This document shows, one piece after another, positions 4,225-55,475 of a stretch of DNA of 64,000 nucleotides. The stretch covers positions 186,001 to 250,000 of the IMG/VR virus record IMGVR_UViG_3300045971_000577; one strand, written 5' to 3'. The position numbers and the translations under genes are program-made. Each line of letters begins with the position of its first letter. The first letter of the stretch is position 1. Below the pieces are notes generated by a model. It was not told the DNA's origin and ran no database searches. It saw only the letters and a program-made list of their open reading frames with translations.

Positions 4225-4702
4225 TAATGTCGGGAAGCTTGTTCACTTCCTTGACAAACAATACACAATTAGGGAACGGCTTATCTTCAACAGGAACCAC
4301 AAGAATATTGCCATTCTTCAGCTTCGGGAAATACCACTTCACTTCAGCGTACACATTTGTGATATTGATTTGTTGTGGTCTCGGAACCATATGACGCAAC
4401 GGATTGAATACCATTGTGTGAAATCCGCGATCATTCAAACTTGTTAGCGGCATCACTTCCAAATCGCTGTAGTCTTCGTCGCATACAAGGATGGACCAAT
4501 CTAGCGGCATTTGTACTTTCCATTCACCAATCTCAAGAACTACCGCTGGTGCATAAAAGCTTTCTAGGAAGATGAGCGGAATAAAGAAATAGTCAGGATT
4601 CTTTGGATCAGAATAATCTAAGACGCAATATCTAATGTCTTCGATTTCATTAGGTATCTTATCTAAATCATATGATTCGTTTGCGTTAGTTAAAATTTTG
4701 AT
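4199..4702 (-). CDS. Conserved hypothetical protein, probably ATC-initiated
   Basis: Frame stays open 64 codons upstream of ATG 4510, to ATC at 4702; GAGGTG Shine-Dalgarno (SD) 5 nt upstream; in-frame TGA further up. Confidence 0.6.
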   Translation of the reverse strand: MKILTNANESYDLDKIPNEIEDIRYCVLDYSDPKNPDYFFIPLIFLESFYAPAVVLEIGEWKVQMPLDWSILVCDEDYSDLEVMPLTSLNDRGFHTMVFNPLRHMVPRPQQINITNVYAEVKWYFPKLKNGNILVVPVEDKPFPNCVLFVKEVNKLPDIIDIGALFE

Positions 4703-5937: not shown

Positions 5938-7400
5938 TAGTAATTCACTTTCGTAATACTGTATGGATATTGTGCTTCTGCATAGAACTTCTTTCTCTTT
6001 GTAAGATGTCGCTTGGAGAATTTACAATTCGAACACACGTCATACACGTTCACAAAATCCTTATCTGGCGCAACTCTAATACCTCTACCAATACTCTGAA
6101 TGACACGCACAAAACTCTTGCCTGCTTCAAACAATACTAGATTATAGATACGAACGATATTGATACCAGTTGATGCTACACCATATGTAGCAATAATGAT
6201 TTTGCCGTCTACTTCCTGAACTTCTTTATACTCGGCCTTTCTATCTTTCGACTTCATCTTACCGGAAACGAAGATCGCGTCTGGTATAAGCGATTGTAAC
6301 TTTTCGCCAGTCTCAATGCGATCTACCAAAATGAGTGTGCTGCCGGATTCCGCCATGGCCCCAATCTGCTTCGCTAAGAACTTCAATCTAATTTGATTCG
6401 TTGTCAACCACTTTAATTCTGATTGATAGTTATCAAATGCAGCTTCACCTAAATCGTTTAGTTGCCACACATTCACATGTAATTGTGCAAGAATGCCCTT
6501 GTCTTGCAATTCTTTTGTGTTGATTTTTCCAAGCAACGGTCCGATACATGCAATAACTGCTGTCTTTTCGAGATCTTCTTCGGGCATTGTTCCTGTAAGG
6601 CCCCATCGAATTGGAGCATTAGCCAAATAGCTCGATAATAGCTTTCTCAATACATCGGCTTTCGCCTTGTGTACTTCGTCCACAATGACGCACACCACGT
6701 CGTCGAAGAAAACGTTTATATCTATTTCTAACTCTTCCTCTTTCGAACGCTTTGAAAGGCTTTCCAAACTTTGCCATGTGCAGATAGTATGTTTACGTTG
6801 ATAGTCTTTTCTGTCACCGAAGAATACACCTACATCTAGTCCAAGATTGATATAATCTTCTTCGGTTTGTGTAACTAGGTCTTTAGTTGGAACAATAACA
6901 ATAGTGCGTCCATACGGCTGAACTTTATGGCTAAGAATAGCCGTTATCAGCGTTTTTCCAGATCCCGTAGGAGCAATATTGATACCATTTAGATTCTCGA
7001 GGTACGAATTGATTACATCGAGTTGGTGATCCTTGATAACGATCGGTTGACCGGCAAGTGGATGACCTACTGGCCAACCAATATGCGAATAGCTATCTTC
7101 TTTTACTTTCTCAAATTCAAACGAATGTTCGAATCGATTATCGTCGATTTCAATTTCGTACCCTTGCGCCTGCACAATGGGTAGCATCTTATCGAGTAGG
7201 TTGATATAGCTGCGACCACCGATGTCTGCAAAGCTCATCATACCATTCCAGCGTCCCAACTTGTAACTTGGAGAGTATCTGGCTGCAGGGATAAAGAACT
7301 CCAACGATTCTACTAACTTACGCCGTGTTACCACATCGAGATCGTGAAAGCGAATATTCACTTCGTCTAATATTTCTAATCTTGCTTTTTGCATTGCCAT
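5937..7400 (-). CDS. uvsW: SF2 DNA helicase, UvsW-like
   Basis: [18 protein letters not shown] and QSIGRGIR motifs; next to UvsY/UvsX. Confidence 0.9.
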
Positions 7401-49105: not shown

Positions 49106-50527
49106 TTAGAAGTCGTACTTTTGAACCATGACGGTTTCAAGCATGATGCTGATTGGAGTCATTTCCTTACCACCCAGCACGCTCTTCACAATGCTTGGCG
49201 AGAAGCCAGATACCAACGCAGCACCGACCTTGTTGTAGGTCACAGGGCTGTTTCCGGCGCGACCGTTCAAGTTCCAGAACACAACTTGCGGGACCTTGTA
49301 GCCAGCCGCAGCGTATTCCTTCTCAATGAACTCCATCGCAGAAACGCTAACCGCAGCGCCACCGCCATAACGGCCACCAGTTGTGCCTGCTGTTACACAA
49401 GCATCAAACTCCATGTCCGAAAGGATAAGCACCTTGGTAGGCATTTCCTTCTGATCAACCTTACCCTTCACGGCCGCACCAAGAATCAGCTTGAATACTG
49501 CTGCAAGGTCGGTGTTCATTGCCCAATCCGAACGGTTCATCGCGTCGTAACGCTGACCCAAGTCACCTGTCAACTTAACCATCGATGGCGAGCCACTGAA
49601 GGTTACAAAGGTGTCCTTGAATACACCGCCCATACGCTCGGAAACGTACAAACCCAACGACACTGCAACATCCAGAGCAGTTACGCTACCAGACACTTCA
49701 GAACTCATCGAACCCGATACGTCAACGACCGGCATGATGTTCTCGTCCGAACCTTCCAAGTAGTTAGGCAGAGCCTTCCACTGTTCGATCGAAACGGTAC
49801 GATCACCGGACTTCAACGAACGGATAACGTCGTATGGGTACGACACGCTCGCGTTGATCTTGGTTTCACCAGCCACCAGTGCAGCCTTGTAAGCACCGTA
49901 TCCCGAAGGATCGTGCTTCAAGAATGCCTTCTGGTAACGACCAGCAGCAACCGAAGGAACGTGAGGGTATGTGATACCTGTCCACTCCTGCGCACACATC
50001 TTCTGCTCGACAGTGTTGGACAAGCCAACTACGAGCTTACGATATTCCTTGGGAGTTAGACGCAAGTAGGAGCGAATCTTGTTCGCTTCCGCGCCCTGAC
50101 GAGGCATCCACTTTGCGCACAAACCGTCCTTCACGTCGTTCAACGCAAAAGCGATCATACGCAGAGCTTCACGCTCCAATGTGGTACCAAAAGTCAGCAA
50201 AACGTCGTCCCAGCGACCCAGTTCCGGAACCTTCACCAACAGGCGCGAAGCCAATACGGGTTCAGTCTTCAGAACATAGGAGAACAACTTACGGAATGTT
50301 TCACGCTCACCAGCACCACCACGTGCATCACGTGCCCACTGAAGGACGCGGATTGCGACTTCGCTGTCTTCTGCCAAGGCAGCAGCGAAAGTAGAAGTGA
50401 TGTCCTTACCACGGCTTGCGCCAGCAAGGAAGAAGAGGTCCACGTTCTTGTTCAACGAGGATGCGTTTGTAACTGCGCCGTTAGTTGTGGTTGCGCTCGA
50501 GTTTACTGCTTCAAATAGTGTTGTCAT
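49106..50527 (-). CDS. DUF2828-type TROVE-like + vWA protein (Ro60-like)
   Basis: TTNGA, WARD.RGGAGER, GRWDD, AKWMPR; vWA MIDAS VVDVSGSM; VLILSDMEFD, VVFWNL, VSGFSP; start MTTLF at 50527. Confidence 0.85.
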   Translation of the reverse strand: MTTLFEAVNSSATTTNGAVTNASSLNKNVDLFFLAGASRGKDITSTFAAALAEDSEVAIRVLQWARDARGGAGERETFRKLFSYVLKTEPVLASRLLVKVPELGRWDDVLLTFGTTLEREALRMIAFALNDVKDGLCAKWMPRQGAEANKIRSYLRLTPKEYRKLVVGLSNTVEQKMCAQEWTGITYPHVPSVAAGRYQKAFLKHDPSGYGAYKAALVAGETKINASVSYPYDVIRSLKSGDRTVSIEQWKALPNYLEGSDENIMPVVDVSGSMSSEVSGSVTALDVAVSLGLYVSERMGGVFKDTFVTFSGSPSMVKLTGDLGQRYDAMNRSDWAMNTDLAAVFKLILGAAVKGKVDQKEMPTKVLILSDMEFDACVTAGTTGGRYGGGAAVSVSAMEFIEKEYAAAGYKVPQVVFWNLNGRAGNSPVTYNKVGAALVSGFSPSIVKSVLGGKEMTPISIMLETVMVQKYDF

Positions 50528-50544
50528 AGTGTTTTCCTTTATCA

Positions 50545-50656
50545 GAATCATTTTTTATACTGTTGCCTATACCAATTCGGCTACCTTGCTGTTACCAACA
50601 AGGGTGGGACTCGAACCCACAACTCACAGTTGCTTAGTTAATTGCGGAACTGATTC
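50545..50656 (-). ncRNA. Y-RNA-like unit A (YrlA-like circularly permuted tRNA domain)
   Basis: GAATCA/TGATTC closing stem + CCGCAA; T-arm GTGGG-TTCGAGT-CCCAC; loop-closed 7-bp acceptor; then D-arm. Confidence 0.75.
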
Positions 50657-50670
50657 ATTAGAATGAAATC

Positions 50671-50779
50671 AAGATTATTGTTTTACGTTGACCTGTGTGC
50701 TGCCGTTACACTAAGCTACTCCGGAGTCGAACCGGTCCCCTGGTTTGGATTGTAAGTTTTTGGTTGCTGTAATAATCTT
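50671..50779 (-). ncRNA. Y-RNA-like unit B (permuted tRNA-like, reduced acceptor)
   Basis: AAGATTATT/AATAATCTT stem + ACAGCAA; CCGG-TTCGACT-CCGG T-arm precedes the GTG..CAC D-arm. Confidence 0.7.
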
Positions 50780-50793
50780 TTAGAAATAAATCA

Positions 50794-50899
50794 GATTCGG
50801 CGTGGCGAGTTTTTGCTTTCCCCTCCAGAAAGGTTCTTAGTTAATACCCTTTCGGGTGGTTGCTAATATGCTATATTTTAGTTGTTGCTGAAACGAATC
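50794..50899 (-). ncRNA. Y-RNA-like unit C (no tRNA domain)
   Basis: GATTCG/CGAATC stem + TTTCAGCAA; internal ACCC-GAAA-GGGT hairpin. Confidence 0.6.
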
Positions 50900-50928
50900 G
50901 TTAGTAATGTTGTTGCAAGTCTCGTAGT

Positions 50929-51312
50929 TTACAAGTTCTTTAGCGACATGTCAATGACTTCGGTTGTAAAGTGCGAAGTAGGACTACCTACACCCGGATC
51001 AACTAAAATATCGACACCGATCATAATATTTTTACTGTCTTCGTCCGATTGGAGATCAAACATTAGATAATATCCACCCGTGCCAGTAAATGAAAGCCAT
51101 GCATCTGGCATTCTGACTTTTGTATTACGTTCCTTAATGATGGTGTTTGCATTTGCACATGCATATCGTACCATATCGGTATGAATCAAATACAATACAT
51201 CATGCACCGATATCGGTGCAGACGGCCATTTCCTGACTGCCGGGTTATTATCCCAAATATAGGAGGCTGCTGCATGAAGTGATACAAGATTGTAGCAGAG
51301 TTCAATTTTCAT
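50929..51312 (-). CDS. Hypothetical protein within the RNA array
   Basis: Start MKIELC at 51312. Confidence 0.6.
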   Translation of the reverse strand: MKIELCYNLVSLHAAASYIWDNNPAVRKWPSAPISVHDVLYLIHTDMVRYACANANTIIKERNTKVRMPDAWLSFTGTGGYYLMFDLQSDEDSKNIMIGVDILVDPGVGSPTSHFTTEVIDMSLKNL

Positions 51313-51335
51313 TATGATGTGGTTTAGATAAGACA

Positions 51336-51556
51336 GCGTGGTGTAAGGGACCTGTAGAGTCAATATCTTACCGTAGCTCGATATGTTATATACATGCTAT
51401 CGGGCCTTACCCCGAGATCGAACCTTTTACATCGTCCGAGGATGTTTGTTAGTTCTTATACAGGGTTCATTGCCTAATCATACAAAAAGGCTCCGCCTGT
51501 GTCGAGTGCTAACTACAATACCGCCTTGCAGCGATGATTATTTGCTGTATCCACGC
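51336..51556 (-). ncRNA. Y-RNA-like unit D (~220 nt)
   Basis: GCGTGG/CCACGC stem + ATACAGCAA; internal ACATC/GATGT hairpin and GGTTCGA. Confidence 0.55.
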
Positions 51557-51578
51557 CTTAAAATATACTACAAGCTGT

Positions 51579-51607
51579 ATTATGCAGTAGTTCTATTTAC
51601 CTGTCAA
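51579..51607 (-). promoter_or_regulatory. Sigma70-type promoter heading the Y-RNA/Ro60-like operon
   Basis: TTGACA-17-CATAAT about 22 nt upstream of unit D. Confidence 0.7.
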
Positions 51608-51624
51608 CCTGCGGCTTGCCGGTT

Positions 51625-52416
51625 TTATAGGTCAGAATTAGTAGATTTTTGGTAGGCAAGCTCTTTATTGATAAAATCAACTGCTCTTTTCATCAATCGC
51701 TTATAATCTCGTGAACGTTCTTTTTCCGGAAAGAGGTCAGATATCTTATGAAGAGCCAGTGCTCTCCTCAATGTAGTCATTGCATGTGTTTGCATCGAAT
51801 CAGCAGGCATATCTTTCATCGCAGCCCTCTCAATTGCAAGTGTAACCGAATGAAGGACTTGGGCGAACCGTGCGTTGATTTCTGCAGGTTCGGCACGATA
51901 CGCTAAATTACCCATATACGGATCATCTATGCGGTGTTGTTTCTTTCTCGGAGTTCTGTATGTGTCCGAACTACTTGCCTTTCCACTGGATTTCAAATCA
52001 TCCAGTGCGTGCCTAAGCTCGTGTACGATGGTCGATTTGATTGTGTTCGATGTTATAAAATCTGCATTTAGATAAATTGCCGGAACAGTATTATCCCATA
52101 ATCCGAGTGTATGTCTAATATTCTCTGGATCATCGTCGACATAGTTCTTTCCTGCCTGTTCGGCTGCTGCCTTTCTCGACGCCTTGATTTTTGCACGCAA
52201 GGCATCGCCCTGCAGCAGGACTATGGAAATATCTTCTATTCCCTCAAGCGGCGTGGTGCAGAAGTCGTCTATCTTACCCACGTCTAATGGTTCGGCGTTA
52301 TCTGGATCGATATAATCAGCATACTTCTGTATGTGCTTATAAACGGCGGAAGACAGGGAAATAATCGCCCTGTCTTCTTCTGTAGTTTCGATAATGAATA
52401 GTTCTAGTAGCTTCAT
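51625..52416 (-). CDS. HExxH metallopeptidase-like late protein (MKLLELF leader)
   Basis: IVHELRHALD; AEINARFAQ; GATAAATA at 52435-52442. Confidence 0.65.
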   Translation of the reverse strand: MKLLELFIIETTEEDRAIISLSSAVYKHIQKYADYIDPDNAEPLDVGKIDDFCTTPLEGIEDISIVLLQGDALRAKIKASRKAAAEQAGKNYVDDDPENIRHTLGLWDNTVPAIYLNADFITSNTIKSTIVHELRHALDDLKSSGKASSSDTYRTPRKKQHRIDDPYMGNLAYRAEPAEINARFAQVLHSVTLAIERAAMKDMPADSMQTHAMTTLRRALALHKISDLFPEKERSRDYKRLMKRAVDFINKELAYQKSTNSDL

Positions 52417-52810: not shown

Positions 52811-52861
52811 ATTATTCCTGTATAAACTGGCCTATAAGCTATTATAATGATAAATAAAATT

Positions 52862-53680
52862 ATGTCAATACCCTACACATATCTAATCGGCTGGTCAGAC
52901 CATAATCTATGGTACTATGGAGTACGATATGCAAAGACATGCAATCCAAATGATTTATGGGTAACATATTTTACCAGTTCTAAGAAAGTAAGAGAATATA
53001 GAGAACAGTTCGGAGAACCAAATATAAGGCAAATAAGAAAAGTATTTTCAACTACAAAATCTGCCAAAGTGTGGGAAGATAAGGTATTAGCAAGATTGAA
53101 AGTTTGTAATAATCCAAAATGGATAAACCAATCAAATAACTACTCATTTGCATCAGTCGATAAATCGTGGAACGATGGATTAACAAAAAACACCGATAAC
53201 AGATTACAGAATATATCAAATAAAATTTCTGCTAAACGAAAAGAAAAATACTGGAAATCCGGTGATTACATTCGATCAACCGATCAAGTCATTAAAAATC
53301 GTATGTTTCAAATAACAAGAAATAATCCAAATTTTATATTTGAAACATACGATCTATTTGCCGAATATTGTAATAAAGAATATGTGTCAGGTAAGTCTAT
53401 AACAGATATATCAAAATCGGTAAATGTCGGTATGGTTACAGTAAAACTTGCCATTGAACATCAGACCGGTGATATGCCGATAATCGATCAATCATGGTCA
53501 AAACTTAAGAAGAACAACCCGGAATTACCATTCGACGATTATAAAGATTTATGCGACTATCTATACTCGGAAATATTAATAAAAGGTCGAAAAAGATTTC
53601 ATCTTCGGAAAGAACTTAATATTTCCGAAGATGCTATAAGAAGAGCTATTCGTGTCTCAGAAGCCACTCGTTGTTTATGA
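52862..53680 (+). CDS. GIY-YIG (Seg-like) homing endonuclease
   Basis: PYTYLIGW..HNLWYYGVRY...YFTSSK; AT-rich; overlaps the ligase 3' end convergently. Confidence 0.8.
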   Translation: MSIPYTYLIGWSDHNLWYYGVRYAKTCNPNDLWVTYFTSSKKVREYREQFGEPNIRQIRKVFSTTKSAKVWEDKVLARLKVCNNPKWINQSNNYSFASVDKSWNDGLTKNTDNRLQNISNKISAKRKEKYWKSGDYIRSTDQVIKNRMFQITRNNPNFIFETYDLFAEYCNKEYVSGKSITDISKSVNVGMVTVKLAIEHQTGDMPIIDQSWSKLKKNNPELPFDDYKDLCDYLYSEILIKGRKRFHLRKELNISEDAIRRAIRVSEATRCL

Positions 53681-54722
53681 CCTTAAATGAAAATTTACCG
53701 TCTATTCTCTTAAAGACCAATCCTTCTCTAATCAGCGAGTTGATAGATGGTCCTTTAGCATAGTTCAATAATCCATCGACACCGTAAATTCTTAAATCTT
53801 CTAAAGATTCAGACATAGCAATAACCGGTACATGTTCGACCATATTTTTATCGAGGCCTAATTCGTGTAATCTGTATACTACTTCATGCCGCTGATGCGG
53901 AGCAAGATAACATGCATTATCAATATCATAAATGTCAAATATGTGCAATTTATGCGATGTAAAGCCCTCTTTGTTACCCTGTATACCGGGCCCTTGCAAC
54001 TCGCCCTGTACAGCGAAATTTTCGCCTAATTCCCGCAAAGCGTCACGCAAGCCTGAGTCAATAAACATGAGCACAAGGCTATTAAACGCATTGCTGTCAT
54101 CAGTTTTCAGTTCCCAGTTTCTGCCGCACACGCCTTCAAAGCCGCTACGGAAGAAACCAGTAAACGAAGTACCATCCACTTTCATGGTAATCTCGTAACG
54201 AGAATCTTCATTCTCGACGAAAATATCATGCACAATGTTTTGGCAACGTTCCTGATCTGTCCTCTGAATGAAGCTAGGGAAGTTTCCACGAATCTGCCCA
54301 GCAAGTTCTGTAGGAACAGGAGGTTCGTATTTCTGCACACCAAGCAGGTCAGTTACATCATCACCCTCGTGAAGAGGACAAGCATGTTCGGCATTGAAGA
54401 ATGTATAGGACCATTCTGTTGCAAGTGTGTCCGAAATAGGAATCAGCAAGCCCTGCGAAACTTGGCCACGCAGTTTTACTGTTTTCAGTCTGAAACCTTC
54501 TTGCTCACCCATTCTCTTGAATGAGCTTTTACGCAGGAATTCAAACTCTTCACGGATAGGCAAGAAACTGTCAATTTCAAAGTAGACGCAAAGATCGCCT
54601 ACAGCGAATTCACCTTTCTTGACAACAACTTTCCAGCCGTCAACAGTTGCTACCTCGATAGCGTCTGCTTCAGGAATAGGGTTCAGTTCTAGAATTTTTC
54701 TGATTGTTGCTAGGTGTCTCAT
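53646..54722 (-). CDS. RNA ligase (DRB0094/Rnl2-like family)
   Basis: LATIRKI..LNPIPEADAIE, VYFEIDSFLP, KLRGQVSQGL, TMKVDGTS (KxDG), QGELQGPGIQGN, REGLVFK, SFKVINN. Confidence 0.9.
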   Translation of the reverse strand: MRHLATIRKILELNPIPEADAIEVATVDGWKVVVKKGEFAVGDLCVYFEIDSFLPIREEFEFLRKSSFKRMGEQEGFRLKTVKLRGQVSQGLLIPISDTLATEWSYTFFNAEHACPLHEGDDVTDLLGVQKYEPPVPTELAGQIRGNFPSFIQRTDQERCQNIVHDIFVENEDSRYEITMKVDGTSFTGFFRSGFEGVCGRNWELKTDDSNAFNSLVLMFIDSGLRDALRELGENFAVQGELQGPGIQGNKEGFTSHKLHIFDIYDIDNACYLAPHQRHEVVYRLHELGLDKNMVEHVPVIAMSESLEDLRIYGVDGLLNYAKGPSINSLIREGLVFKRIDGKFSFKVINNEWLLRHE

Positions 54723-54735
54723 TACGTGACTCATT

Positions 54736-55193: not shown

Positions 55194-55223
55194 AGTATAA
55201 AAGACGACACCGCCCTGTGTCAA
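55194..55223 (-). promoter_or_regulatory. Sigma70-type promoter overlapped by an inverted repeat
   Basis: TTGACA-18-TATACT; GACACCGCC...GGCGGTGTC flanks the -35 box. Confidence 0.65.
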
Positions 55224-55475
55224 GGCGGTGTCGGTTTAAGCAGGATGATCGTAAATGGTTATTTTATTGTCTGGTCGATATACTGAATTTACCCCGACCA
55301 TATCACTAATCGCTAGTGCTCGATTCTACTCTTGTGTCTGCTGTAGACCGCGTATCGGCTTCTGCCGTATATCTATTCCGTCGGTGTGCGATATTTCTAC
55401 CGCATGTGCCTTACGAGCCACCTTCTATAGCTTTGAGCGTATTATTGGATTGCTGTAATCATCCTAAAAATGTAT

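What the first reader, a model, noticed from the sequence alone, without database searches (positions are those of the whole stretch)
51336..51556. Double-length unit D: a ~220-nt member with an uncharacterised internal domain
It has the same closing-stem + ACAGCAA head as units A-C but about 200 nt of interior, including an ACATC-CTCGGAC-GATGT hairpin, a GGTTCGA T-loop-like word and CGGG..CCCG pairing. It is the first element after the promoter, and a protein gene separates it from the other units. It may carry a different effector module (inference).
Basis: partly seen in the sequence, partly recalled or inferred. Interest (0 to 1): 0.6.

Follow-up and report, generated by a model that had tools for sequence, protein, structure and literature searches.

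The report
Large Y-RNA-like phage noncoding RNA
The flagged 220-nt stretch is a real, conserved, pseudoknotted noncoding RNA of a jumbo phage. It shares a closing stem and an ACAGCAA "handle" with smaller tRNA-like RNAs next to a Ro60-like ring-protein gene, so it is most likely an oversized new kind of Y RNA.

Summary
Window 51557-51335 (minus strand) encodes an RNA of about 223 nt. Its ends pair in a 7-bp closing stem, followed by ACAGCAA. A near-consensus sigma-70-type promoter lies about 20 nt upstream.

I found 32 distinct homologues, 124-272 nt long, in related uncultured jumbo-phage contigs. Six helices, two of them pseudoknots, are 96% paired across 31 sequences. Fourteen of 29 pairs show compensatory changes, and no shuffle reached these values.

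The "T-loop-like" GGUUCGA is more likely the 3' strand of an H-type pseudoknot with the P4 loop. The P5 loop GUAAGG pairs with CCUUAC in the 3' tail. The extra length comes from a GNRA hairpin plus K-turn-like arm(s).

No Rfam family matches. The downstream 481-aa DUF2828/DUF7788 protein folds like Ro60/TROVE. Neighbouring units B and C are tRNA-like (C draws a sub-threshold YrlA match) and carry the same handle. In loci fetched by the RNA alone, the Ro-like gene follows on the same strand wherever the flank is long enough.

Best reading: a new, large Y-RNA-like partner of a phage Ro60-like protein with a novel effector domain. Binding and expression are untested.

The parts
51579..51607 (-). 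Sigma-70-type promoter of unit D (TTGACA, 17 nt, CATAAT)
   Evidence: 11 of 12 matches. The same TTGAC-N17-TATAAT lies about 20 nt before the closing stem in all homologues with upstream flank.
51335..51557 (-). Unit D RNA, from closing-stem 5' strand to closing-stem 3' strand (223 nt; U-rich tail GUCUU runs to 51330)
   Evidence: CM R2 hit of 99.2 bits on the 3' half. 32 distinct homologues.
51551..51557 (-). P1, 5' strand of the closing stem (GGCGUGG)
   Evidence: Pairs with 51341-51335. 100% paired in 31 sequences; 3 of 7 pairs have compensatory changes.
51335..51341 (-). P1, 3' strand of the closing stem (CCACGCU), followed by GUCUU
   Evidence: The 3' consensus in homologues is ...CACUCU-GUUUU.
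51542..51548 (-). Head motif ACAGCAA, shared by units A-E; proposed contact for the Ro-like protein (inference)
   Evidence: Nearly invariant in 31 homologues. The same motif sits beside a hairpin stem in two odd 'tRNAs' of Cronobacter phage S13.
51520..51535 (-). P2 hairpin with GNRA tetraloop (AUCGCU-GCAA-GGCGGU)
   Evidence: A GNRA-capped hairpin stands at this place in 25 of 32 homologues by a strict test. Five more have 3-bp or GUAAAA-loop versions by eye. 3 of 4 pairs covary in A1.
51460..51500 (-). P3 arm with a K-turn-like motif (NC helix ACAGG/CCUGU; GGA; C helix GCCU/AGGC; bulge AAU; GA)
   Evidence: The strict motif occurs in 20 of 32 homologues against 1.9 +/- 1.4 in shuffles. The window's copy has a C.C mismatch and fails the strict test, so it is tentative here.
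51429..51445 (-).
   Evidence: 95.5% paired; 3 of 5 pairs have compensatory changes.
51416..51428 (-). J4/5, AAAAGGUUCGAUC. Its GUUC (51423-51420) probably pairs with GGAC of the P4 loop (pseudoknot PK-A), with the A-rich stretch as loop 3
   Evidence: 88.7-90.3% paired by column. By eye the pairing holds with a 1-nt register shift in most of the divergent group: GAGC:GUUC in L015, GAAC:GUUC in L100, GGAC:GUCC in L098 and L115; L004 and L014 keep only 3 bp. Covariation is weak; tentative.
51400..51415 (-).
   Evidence: 96.1% paired; 4 of 5 pairs have compensatory changes.
51350..51397 (-). P6, a variable two-part hairpin, expanded in the window; the inner hairpin has a UACG loop
   Evidence: Per-sequence folds give the same outer helix in almost all homologues. 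Its C-G closing pair becomes U-A in L122, L015 and L004/L102.
51343..51348 (-). 3' strand of pseudoknot PK-B (CCUUAC), pairs with the P5 loop GUAAGG (51410-51405)
   Evidence: 100% paired in 31-33 sequences. Two compensatory pairs: GUUAGG with CCUGAC, and GCAAGG with CCUUGC.
50929..51312 (-). 127-aa ORF between D and unit A; no family match; not conserved at this place in relatives
50926..50954 (-). Second promoter (TTGACA, 17 nt, TAAACT), ahead of unit A
   Evidence: The same promoter follows D directly in L002, L007, L013 and L018.
50793..50900 (-). Unit A: closing stem GAUUCG/CGAAUC, head UCAGCAA; its interior is conserved and not tRNA-like
   Evidence: 97% identity over 34 nt to unit A of L013.
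50671..50779 (-). Unit B: closing stem AAGAUUAUU/AAUAAUCUU, head ACAGCAA; interior with a T arm and a D-arm-like hairpin
50545..50656 (-). Unit C: closing stem GAAUCA/UGAUUC, head CCGCAA; YrlA-like core with T arm, acceptor-like stem and D arm
   Evidence: Rfam YrlA at 27.8 bits, E = 0.002, below the gathering score of 69. Unit C counterparts score 41.9 bits (L012) and 35.8 (L005), and a handle-region RNA of L027 scores 40.1.
49106..50551 (-). 481-aa Ro60-like protein (DUF2828 + DUF7788/vWA)
   Evidence: Pfam. phrog_850 'RNA-binding protein'. The AF2 model (pLDDT 78.7) has Ro60/TROVE structures as its top 13 Foldseek matches, full length, E from 1e-9 to 3e-5.
55242..55465 (-). Unit E: a second large (224 nt) RNA with the same handle (AGGAUGAU/AUCAUCCU, head UACAGCAA), followed by a strong terminator at 55232-55198
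   Evidence: Homologues lie between D and A in L014, L015 and L016.

Best explanation
Unit D is a stand-alone structured noncoding RNA of about 225 nt, transcribed from its own sigma-70-type promoter. It belongs to a set of at least five RNAs in this phage (A-E) built on one plan. The plan is a closing stem formed by the 5' and 3' ends, a single-stranded (A/U)U(A/U)C(A/C)GCAA head next to the stem, a 3' ...UCU-G(U/A)UUU end, and an interchangeable interior. By analogy with Y RNAs, I infer that stem plus head is the binding site for the phage's Ro60-like ring protein, encoded 0.8 kb downstream. I also infer that the interior is an effector or tether module.

D's interior is not tRNA-like. It contains a GNRA-capped hairpin, one or two K-turn-like arms, an H-type pseudoknot (P4 loop with GUUC of J4/5), and a second pseudoknot in which the P5 loop GUAAGG pairs with CCUUAC of the 3' tail. 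As a result the last 20 nt or so pair in turn with P6, the P5 loop and the 5' end.

Shown: the RNA family, its secondary structure, its promoter, its fixed position upstream of the Ro-like gene, and the Ro60-like fold of that protein. Inferred: transcription and stability in vivo, binding to the Ro-like protein, and what the interior recruits. Candidates are host PNPase or another RNase, or phage RNA-repair enzymes acting on the neighbouring tRNAs.
For: Structure: 96.1% paired, 14 of 29 pairs compensatory, 0 of 500 shuffles as high. P1 and PK-B are 100% paired.

Family: CM R2 finds 14 copies in viral contigs and 26 more in metagenome contigs; 32 full-length sequences are distinct.

Promoter: and the conserved TTGAC-N17-TATAAT.

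Not coding: spacings between conserved blocks are spread over all three residues mod 3, and lengths run from 124 to 272 nt.

Shared handle: the arm+head+tail pattern occurs 57 times on the Ro strand and 2 times on the opposite strand in the 17 close loci, and 85 against 23 in all 80 loci. Arm sequences differ between units but stay complementary.

Partner: the protein's model matches Ro60/TROVE structures over its full length.

Association: in loci fetched with a D-derived DNA pattern, a Ro-like gene lies 191-2060 nt downstream on the same strand in 21 of 26. The other 5 have only 481-1636 nt of downstream DNA.

Context: unit C and its counterparts draw repeated sub-threshold YrlA matches to the tRNA-like core only. 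In distant phages the head motif piles up in the 500 nt just before (17) and just after (16) the Ro-like gene, against 1-7 per other bin. In Cronobacter phage S13 the same stem+head replaces the anticodon arm of two tRNA-shaped RNAs next to the gene.

Precedent: Y RNA-like RNAs encoded next to phage and bacterial Ro60 bind it and tether PNPase (PMC4201824; PMC12135203).
Against: The head (ACAGCAA) differs from the motif implicated in Ro60 binding (GNCGAAN0-1G, or CGAA). The protein is a divergent DUF2828-type relative: 13-18% identity to solved Ro60 structures and TM 0.38-0.58. Close relatives L011 and L017, and all phages with about 50%-identical proteins, have the Ro-like gene but no D, so D is dispensable for the protein. 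Loci L002-L081 were fetched around the Ro gene, so only the metagenome set tests the association independently. Covariation for PK-A is weak. The window's own K-turn fails the strict test.
Confidence: 0.6

Rival explanations
1. D is a structured noncoding RNA with a function of its own, such as a decoy, a scaffold or a ribozyme. On this view the shared closing stem, head and U-rich tail are a common processing, termination or stability cassette of this phage's small-RNA and tRNA island, not a Ro-binding site.
For: Units sit head-to-tail among tRNA genes and often begin right after a tRNA 3' end or another unit's ...CUGUUUU. The conserved 5' AGA, 3' UCU and G(U/A)UUU could be RNase or terminator signals. 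Some Ro-like genes lack D. The head differs from known Ro60-binding motifs (PMC4201824).
Against: The head motif is concentrated immediately beside the Ro-like gene in distant phages too. In phage S13 it occurs inside a tRNA-shaped RNA, where it cannot be an end-processing signal. D is always upstream of the Ro-like gene where the flank allows. The plan of a stem from the ends, a conserved single-stranded motif and a variable interior is that of Y RNAs.
Confidence: 0.2
2. D is a tRNA-related mimic or decoy. Its P4 hairpin imitates an anticodon arm (5-bp stem; 7-nt loop C-U-NGG-A-C, with U at the position of U33 and a purine at the position of 37). Its GGUUCGA imitates a T loop. It would divert a host anticodon nuclease or a tRNA-modifying enzyme.
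For: The loop signature in the window and most homologues fits Y32-U33-NNN-R37. It lies in a tRNA island with an RNA ligase gene. Neighbouring units B and C are tRNA-like.
Against: ARAGORN and Rfam tRNA find nothing here. No T stem can form around GGUUCGA. The divergent group has loops ACGGGCA, ACGAGCA and ACGGACA without U33, and has GUCCAAAA in place of GGUUCGA. The conserved GGAC of the loop is complementary to GUUC in J4/5 in nearly all sequences, which would bury the 'anticodon'.
Confidence: 0.08
3. D is a cis-acting leader (riboswitch or attenuator) that controls the downstream 127-aa ORF.
For: It lies between a promoter and an ORF that starts 23 nt after the closing stem.
Against: In L002, L007, L013 and L018 D is followed by another promoter and unit A, with no ORF. 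In other relatives the downstream genes differ and lie 0.3-2 kb away. D ends in the same handle and U-rich tail as the free-standing units. No Rfam riboswitch matches.
Confidence: 0.05
4. The region is protein-coding: the 90-aa plus-strand ORF 51383-51655, or a minus-strand frame.
For: the ORF listing shows a 90-aa ATG ORF on the plus strand. Several homologues are open over much of their length in some frame.
Against: Distances between conserved blocks are spread over all residues mod 3. Homologues range from 124 to 272 nt through loss or gain of whole hairpins. Substitutions are compensatory in helices. The ORF would run through the promoter.
Confidence: 0.02

Closest known systems
Bacterial and phage YrlA-type Y RNAs (Rfam RF02553; Chen et al. 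2014, PMC4201824)
   Same: Encoded next to a Ro60-type gene on the same strand. The 5' and 3' ends form a stem. A short conserved single-stranded motif lies near the 5' end. Several paralogous RNAs per genome share the handle. Units B and C beside D carry a YrlA-like T-arm/D-arm core.
   Different: D is about twice as long (223 nt; family 124-272, against 80-130). It has no tRNA-like core and gives no YrlA match even at E < 10. Its motif is ACAGCAA(A)C, not GNCGAAN0-1G. Its interior has two pseudoknots and K-turn-like arms. The protein partner is a DUF2828-type relative, not an annotated TROVE protein.
Yrl1/Yrl2 of Thermus phage phiLo with phage Ro60 (PMC12135203; PDB 9KOP, 9L5Y)
   Same: A phage-encoded Ro60-like ring with several Y-like RNAs just upstream of its gene, built as stem, bulge and stem. 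That protein is the best structural match of the window's protein.
   Different: The phiLo RNAs were defined by a CGAA motif and are small stem-bulge-stem RNAs. Binding and PNPase recruitment were shown there and are only inferred here.
Metazoan Y RNAs and Deinococcus Yrn1
   Same: Modular logic: a conserved Ro-binding stem made by the RNA's ends, a variable effector loop that gates or tethers partners, and a U-rich 3' end.
   Different: Different binding motif (GGUCCGA bulged helix). There is no evidence of common descent. Their interiors are loops rather than a folded multi-helix domain.
H-type pseudoknots and K-turn-containing structured RNAs (general motifs)
   Same: P4 with PK-A has H-type geometry: 5-bp stem 1, 3-nt loop 1, 4-bp stem 2, A-rich loop 3. 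The insertion arms follow the K-turn pattern GGA | C helix | 3-nt bulge | GA | NC helix.
   Different: These are building blocks, not a family. No known RNA class combines them in this order, and Rfam 15 gives no match.

Membership tests
Y RNA / YrlA class | Encoded adjacent to a Ro60 (TROVE + vWA) gene | tested here: met
   D lies 785 nt upstream of a gene whose model matches Ro60 structures. The gene is 191-2060 nt downstream on the same strand in 21 of 26 independently fetched loci, and the other 5 are too short.
Y RNA / YrlA class | The 5' and 3' ends pair into a stem | tested here: met
   P1 is 7 bp, 100% paired in 31 sequences, with 3 pairs showing compensatory changes.
Y RNA / YrlA class | Ro-binding motif GNCGAAN0-1G (bacteria) or GGUCCGA (animals) near the 5' end | tested here: not met
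   The conserved 5' motif is (A/U)U(A/U)CAGCAA(A)C. It occupies the same position but has a different sequence.
Y RNA / YrlA class | Length 80-130 nt | tested here: not met
   223 nt in the window; 124-272 nt in the family.
Y RNA / YrlA class | tRNA-like T-arm and D-arm domain (YrlA) | tested here: not met
   No YrlA or tRNA match in 51330-51560 at E < 10. No T stem is possible. Units B and C do have the domain.
Y RNA / YrlA class | Physically bound by the Ro60 protein | not testable with these tools
   Needs EMSA or RIP. Complex prediction does not take RNA.
tRNA / tmRNA | Cloverleaf with acceptor, D, anticodon and T arms | tested here: not met
   ARAGORN and Rfam find 14 and 12 tRNAs in the window, none here.
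Any Rfam 15 family | Covariance-model match | tested here: not met
   No match at the gathering score or at E < 10. None on the homologues in L002, L005, L012 and L016 at E < 0.05.
Cis-regulatory leader / riboswitch | A conserved downstream gene under its control | tested here: not met
   The downstream element varies: an ORF, or directly the next promoter plus unit A.
Expressed stable RNA | A discrete transcript with defined ends | not testable with these tools
Only the promoter and the conserved U-rich end speak for it.

The most novel reading that the evidence does not exclude
'Closing stem + UACAGCAA' may be the recognition code of a phage-wide ribonucleoprotein system built on DUF2828-type Ro60-like rings, a protein with matches in 710 cultured phage records. 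D, and its sibling E, would then be a previously unseen class of large, pseudoknotted Y RNAs. Their folded interior would dock a second machine onto the ring, such as host PNPase or another RNase, or the phage's RNA ligase and repair enzymes, to process or protect the phage's tRNA set during infection. The interior could even be catalytic.
Probability: 0.3. Interest if true: 0.8.

Novelty: new variant of a known kind. Interest (0 to 1): 0.64.

Why it matters
Y RNAs are known as small RNAs (80-130 nt) whose loops tether partners to Ro60. A 220-270-nt member would widen what a Y RNA can be. Its independently folded domain has two pseudoknots, K-turn-like arms and GNRA loops, and it sits on a new handle motif. 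It would also tie the uncharacterised DUF2828 phage proteins to an RNA partner. The shared handle gives a simple, testable binding code. The protein occurs in cultured Escherichia, Salmonella, Vibrio, Listeria and Staphylococcus phages, where related handle-bearing RNAs can be sought and tested at the bench.

Tried and rejected
1. A pseudoknot between the P4 loop GGAC and GUCC of the 3' tail. It scores about as well by column (88.7%). It clashes with the P6 outer helix, whose closing pair covaries from C-G to U-A, and with the sixth pair of PK-B. I prefer pairing with GUUC in J4/5.

2. GGUUCGA as a T loop. No T stem can form, and the word changes to GUCCAAAA in divergent homologues while keeping complementarity to the P4 loop.

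3. Pairing of the head with the segment after P5. This appears in the window's MFE fold but is not conserved; that segment forms P6 in all homologues.

4. Model R1 was built with the structure shifted by one column. It was discarded and replaced by R2.

5. blastn of the 1.2-kb region against cultured phages gave no match.

There are therefore no read evidence and no read-laying run.

7. A plain count of the head motif on the two strands is only weakly skewed (45 against 31, and 67 against 54). The signal lies in its position next to the Ro-like gene and in the full arm+head+tail pattern.

8. Pfam, PHROGs and NCBIfam gave nothing for the 127-aa, 263-aa and 120-aa neighbours.

9. CM R2 finds no D-type interior in phages whose Ro-like protein is about 50% identical.

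Full report
**Setting.** The window is bases 186001-250000 of a 369-kb virus record with direct terminal repeats, that is, a jumbo phage. Its minus strand carries 14 tRNA genes, an RNA ligase gene (53646-54734), a non-specific endonuclease, homing-endonuclease-like genes and DHFR. The finding lies on the minus strand.

**Observation.** Read 5' to 3' on the minus strand, the order is as follows:
- A TTGACA-17-CATAAT promoter at 51607-51579 (11 of 12 matches).
- About 20 nt later, GGCGUGG (51557-51551).
- ACAGCAA (51548-51542).
- About 200 nt of interior.
- CCACGCU (51341-51335), which pairs with the first word, then GUCUU.
- 23 nt later, the ATG of a 127-aa ORF (51312-50929).

The hairpin ACAUC-CUCGGAC-GAUGU (51445-51429), the word GGUUCGA (within 51428-51416) and UCGGG...CCCGA (51415-51400) are all present. 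The single sequence does not fold better than shuffles (z = -1.31), so significance had to come from comparison.

**Homologues.** I used the downstream 481-aa protein to fetch 80 related viral loci. nhmmer and blastn found D-like sequence in 11 of them. A covariance model of the 3' half was then built (R2); a first model, R1, was mis-specified by one column and discarded. R2 found 14 copies, including a divergent group in L004, L008, L014 and L015. It found none in phages whose protein is only about 50% identical. A metagenome scan with an 18-nt pattern from D's 3' tail gave 41 loci, 26 of them with new R2 hits. In total there are 32 distinct full-length RNAs of 124-272 nt. Each has TTGAC-N17-TATAAT about 20 nt upstream where flank is available.

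**Structure.** On the 31-sequence full-length alignment A6, six helices are 96.1% paired. Fourteen of 29 pairs show compensatory changes. No shuffle in 500 reached the observed values, and slid controls gave 35-48% pairing. Smaller sets agree. The elements, with window coordinates, are:
- **P1**, the closing stem. It is 100% paired, with G-C/A-U, A-U/C-G/U-A and G-C/A-U exchanges.
- **The head**, which appears single-stranded.
- **P2**, a hairpin capped by GNRA. It is GCAA in the window and GAAA in most homologues (25 of 32 by a strict test). Its stem is different in almost every lineage.
- **P3**, one or two arms that follow the K-turn pattern GGA | C helix | 3-nt bulge | GA | NC helix. The strict pattern occurs in 20 of 32 sequences against 1.9 +/- 1.4 in shuffles. 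The window's copy has a C.C mismatch and is only K-turn-like.
Three of its 5 pairs covary.
- **J4/5**, which holds GGUUCGA.
Four of its 5 pairs covary, and its loop GUAAGG is nearly invariant.
- **P6**, a variable two-part hairpin.
- **The 3' tail**, C-CCUUAC-A followed by the P1 3' strand.

**Two pseudoknots.** PK-B pairs the P5 loop GUAAGG with CCUUAC of the tail. It is paired in every sequence and changes in step: GUUAGG with CCUGAC, and GCAAGG with CCUUGC.

For GGAC in the P4 loop there are two candidate partners. One is GUCC in the tail, 88.7% paired. The other is GUUC in J4/5, 90.3% paired. The tail option collides with P6, whose closing C-G pair becomes U-A in L122, L015 and L004/L102, and with the sixth pair of PK-B. 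The J4/5 option also holds in most of the divergent group after a one-nucleotide register shift: GAGC:GUUC, GAAC:GUUC and GGGC:GUCC. It gives a textbook H-type geometry with an A-rich loop 3. I therefore read the "T-loop-like" word as a pseudoknot strand, with modest confidence.

**Where the double length comes from.** L006 lacks P2 and P3 altogether (124 nt) and L103 lacks P3 (157 nt). The extra length is therefore an inserted P2-P3 domain on a core of about 125 nt.

**Not coding, not a known RNA.** Spacings between conserved blocks fall in all three classes mod 3. Rfam 15 gives no match at the gathering score or at E < 10, and none on four homologues. ARAGORN finds nothing here.

**The common handle.** Units A (50900-50793), B (50779-50671) and C (50656-50545) follow a second promoter at 50954-50926. 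Like D, each has a closing stem of unit-specific but complementary sequence, then 1-4 nt and C(A/C)GCAA, and ends in ...UCU-G(A/U)UUU. A scan for this composite pattern finds 57 instances on the Ro-gene strand and 2 on the other strand in the 17 close loci. Over all 80 loci the counts are 85 and 23.

Units B and C contain T-arm and D-arm hairpins. Unit C and its counterparts in L012 and L005, plus a handle-region RNA in L027, draw sub-threshold matches to the tRNA-like core of Rfam YrlA (27.8-41.9 bits). They do not match the ends of that model. A fifth unit, E (55465-55242, 224 nt), has the same handle and a strong terminator.

**The protein.** The 481-aa product of 50551-49106 matches DUF2828, DUF7788 and vWA and phrog_850 "RNA-binding protein". 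Its AlphaFold model (pLDDT 78.7) has Ro60/TROVE structures as its 13 best Foldseek matches over its full length. These include Thermus phage phiLo Ro60, Deinococcus Rsr, and Xenopus and human Ro60 (E from 1e-9 to 3e-5).

**Association.** In the loci fetched by D's own sequence, the Ro-like gene lies 191-2060 nt downstream on the same strand in 21 of 26. The five exceptions end 481-1636 nt after D. In distant phages the head motif on the gene's strand piles up in the 500 nt before (17) and after (16) the gene, against 1-7 per other bin. In Cronobacter phage S13, two "tRNAs" annotated at 121 and 113 nt, right after the gene, are tRNA-shaped RNAs. Their anticodon arm is replaced by a hairpin followed by UAUUCAGCA, the same stem+head in another topology.

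**Interpretation.** Published work shows that Y RNA-like RNAs encoded beside bacterial and phage Ro60 genes bind the ring through a stem plus a short 5' motif. That work also shows that they use their interior to mimic tRNA or to tether PNPase (PMC4201824; PMC12135203). Jumbo phages are known to carry TROVE proteins (PMC7824862). I found no paper on DUF2828 proteins in phages.

D fits the Y-RNA plan in position, end-pairing and modularity. It fails the class's motif, size and tRNA-likeness criteria. I therefore file it as a new variant: a large Y-RNA-like RNA whose handle probably binds the Ro60-like protein and whose pseudoknotted interior is a distinct effector domain. The main rival, at about 0.2, is that the handle is a processing or stability cassette and D acts independently of the ring protein.

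**Limits.** The 80 viral loci were selected through the protein. Covariation counts treat related sequences as independent. PK-A and the window's K-turn are tentative. D is absent from some close relatives (L011, L017), so it is an accessory partner at most.

Noticed in passing
window 55242-55465 (-), terminator 55198-55232 (-): A second large (224 nt) RNA, 'unit E', has the same handle (AGGAUGAU/AUCAUCCU + UACAGCAA). It lies in the 287-nt gap after the 310-aa ORF and is followed by a strong intrinsic terminator. Homologues lie at L015:3173-3406, L014:3431-3672 and L016:1522-1749, between D and A. Its interior is unrelated to D's.
   Followed up: partly
L137 (Cronobacter phage S13, NC_028773) 4414-4534 and 4544-4656: Two features annotated tRNA-Ser (121 nt) and tRNA-OTHER (113 nt) lie right after the Ro-like gene. 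They have acceptor, D and T arms, but the anticodon arm is replaced by a hairpin plus UAUUCAGCA. They are probably Y-like RNAs misannotated as tRNAs.
   Followed up: partly
window 49106-50551 (-): The DUF2828-type Ro60-like protein has tblastn matches (all below 60% identity) in 710 cultured phage records: Escherichia 120, Mycobacterium 95, Salmonella 77, Vibrio 56, Listeria 54, Staphylococcus 42, Campylobacter 40. Most are annotated 'hypothetical protein' or 'RNA-binding protein'.
   Followed up: partly
L004:5888-5968 and 6853-6963; L008:6359-6439 and 6950-7061; L013:5874-5954; L014:6753-6848: Further handle-bearing units of 81-112 nt lie downstream of the Ro-like gene among the tRNA genes of relatives. 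One type has head CUGCCU; another has a T-arm interior. blastn found no counterpart in the window.
   Followed up: partly
window 51625-52416 (-): The 263-aa ORF directly upstream of D is conserved at that place in many relatives. It contains an HELRH (HExxH) motif, seen by eye. The ESM Atlas gives only weak SprT-like / peptidase-MA structural neighbours (TM 0.39-0.40), so it may be a zincin-like metallopeptidase.
   Followed up: partly
window 52847-53680 (+): A 277-aa ORF on the opposite strand has an N-terminus that looks like a GIY-YIG/Seg-type homing endonuclease by eye. Pfam gives no match.
   Followed up: no
L059 (IMGVR_UViG_638277085_000001, 244,834 bp) 607-853; L078:3489-3727; L072:7326-7538: Distant phages also carry large (213-247 nt) handle-bearing RNAs with unrelated interiors near the Ro-like gene, often starting right after a tRNA 3' end.
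   Followed up: no
upstream of D in most homologues: The stretch between the -10 box and the closing stem (for example TATAATAAGACTTGTTATATACAA) is conserved and partly palindromic. It could be an operator or a 5' leader hairpin.
   Followed up: no
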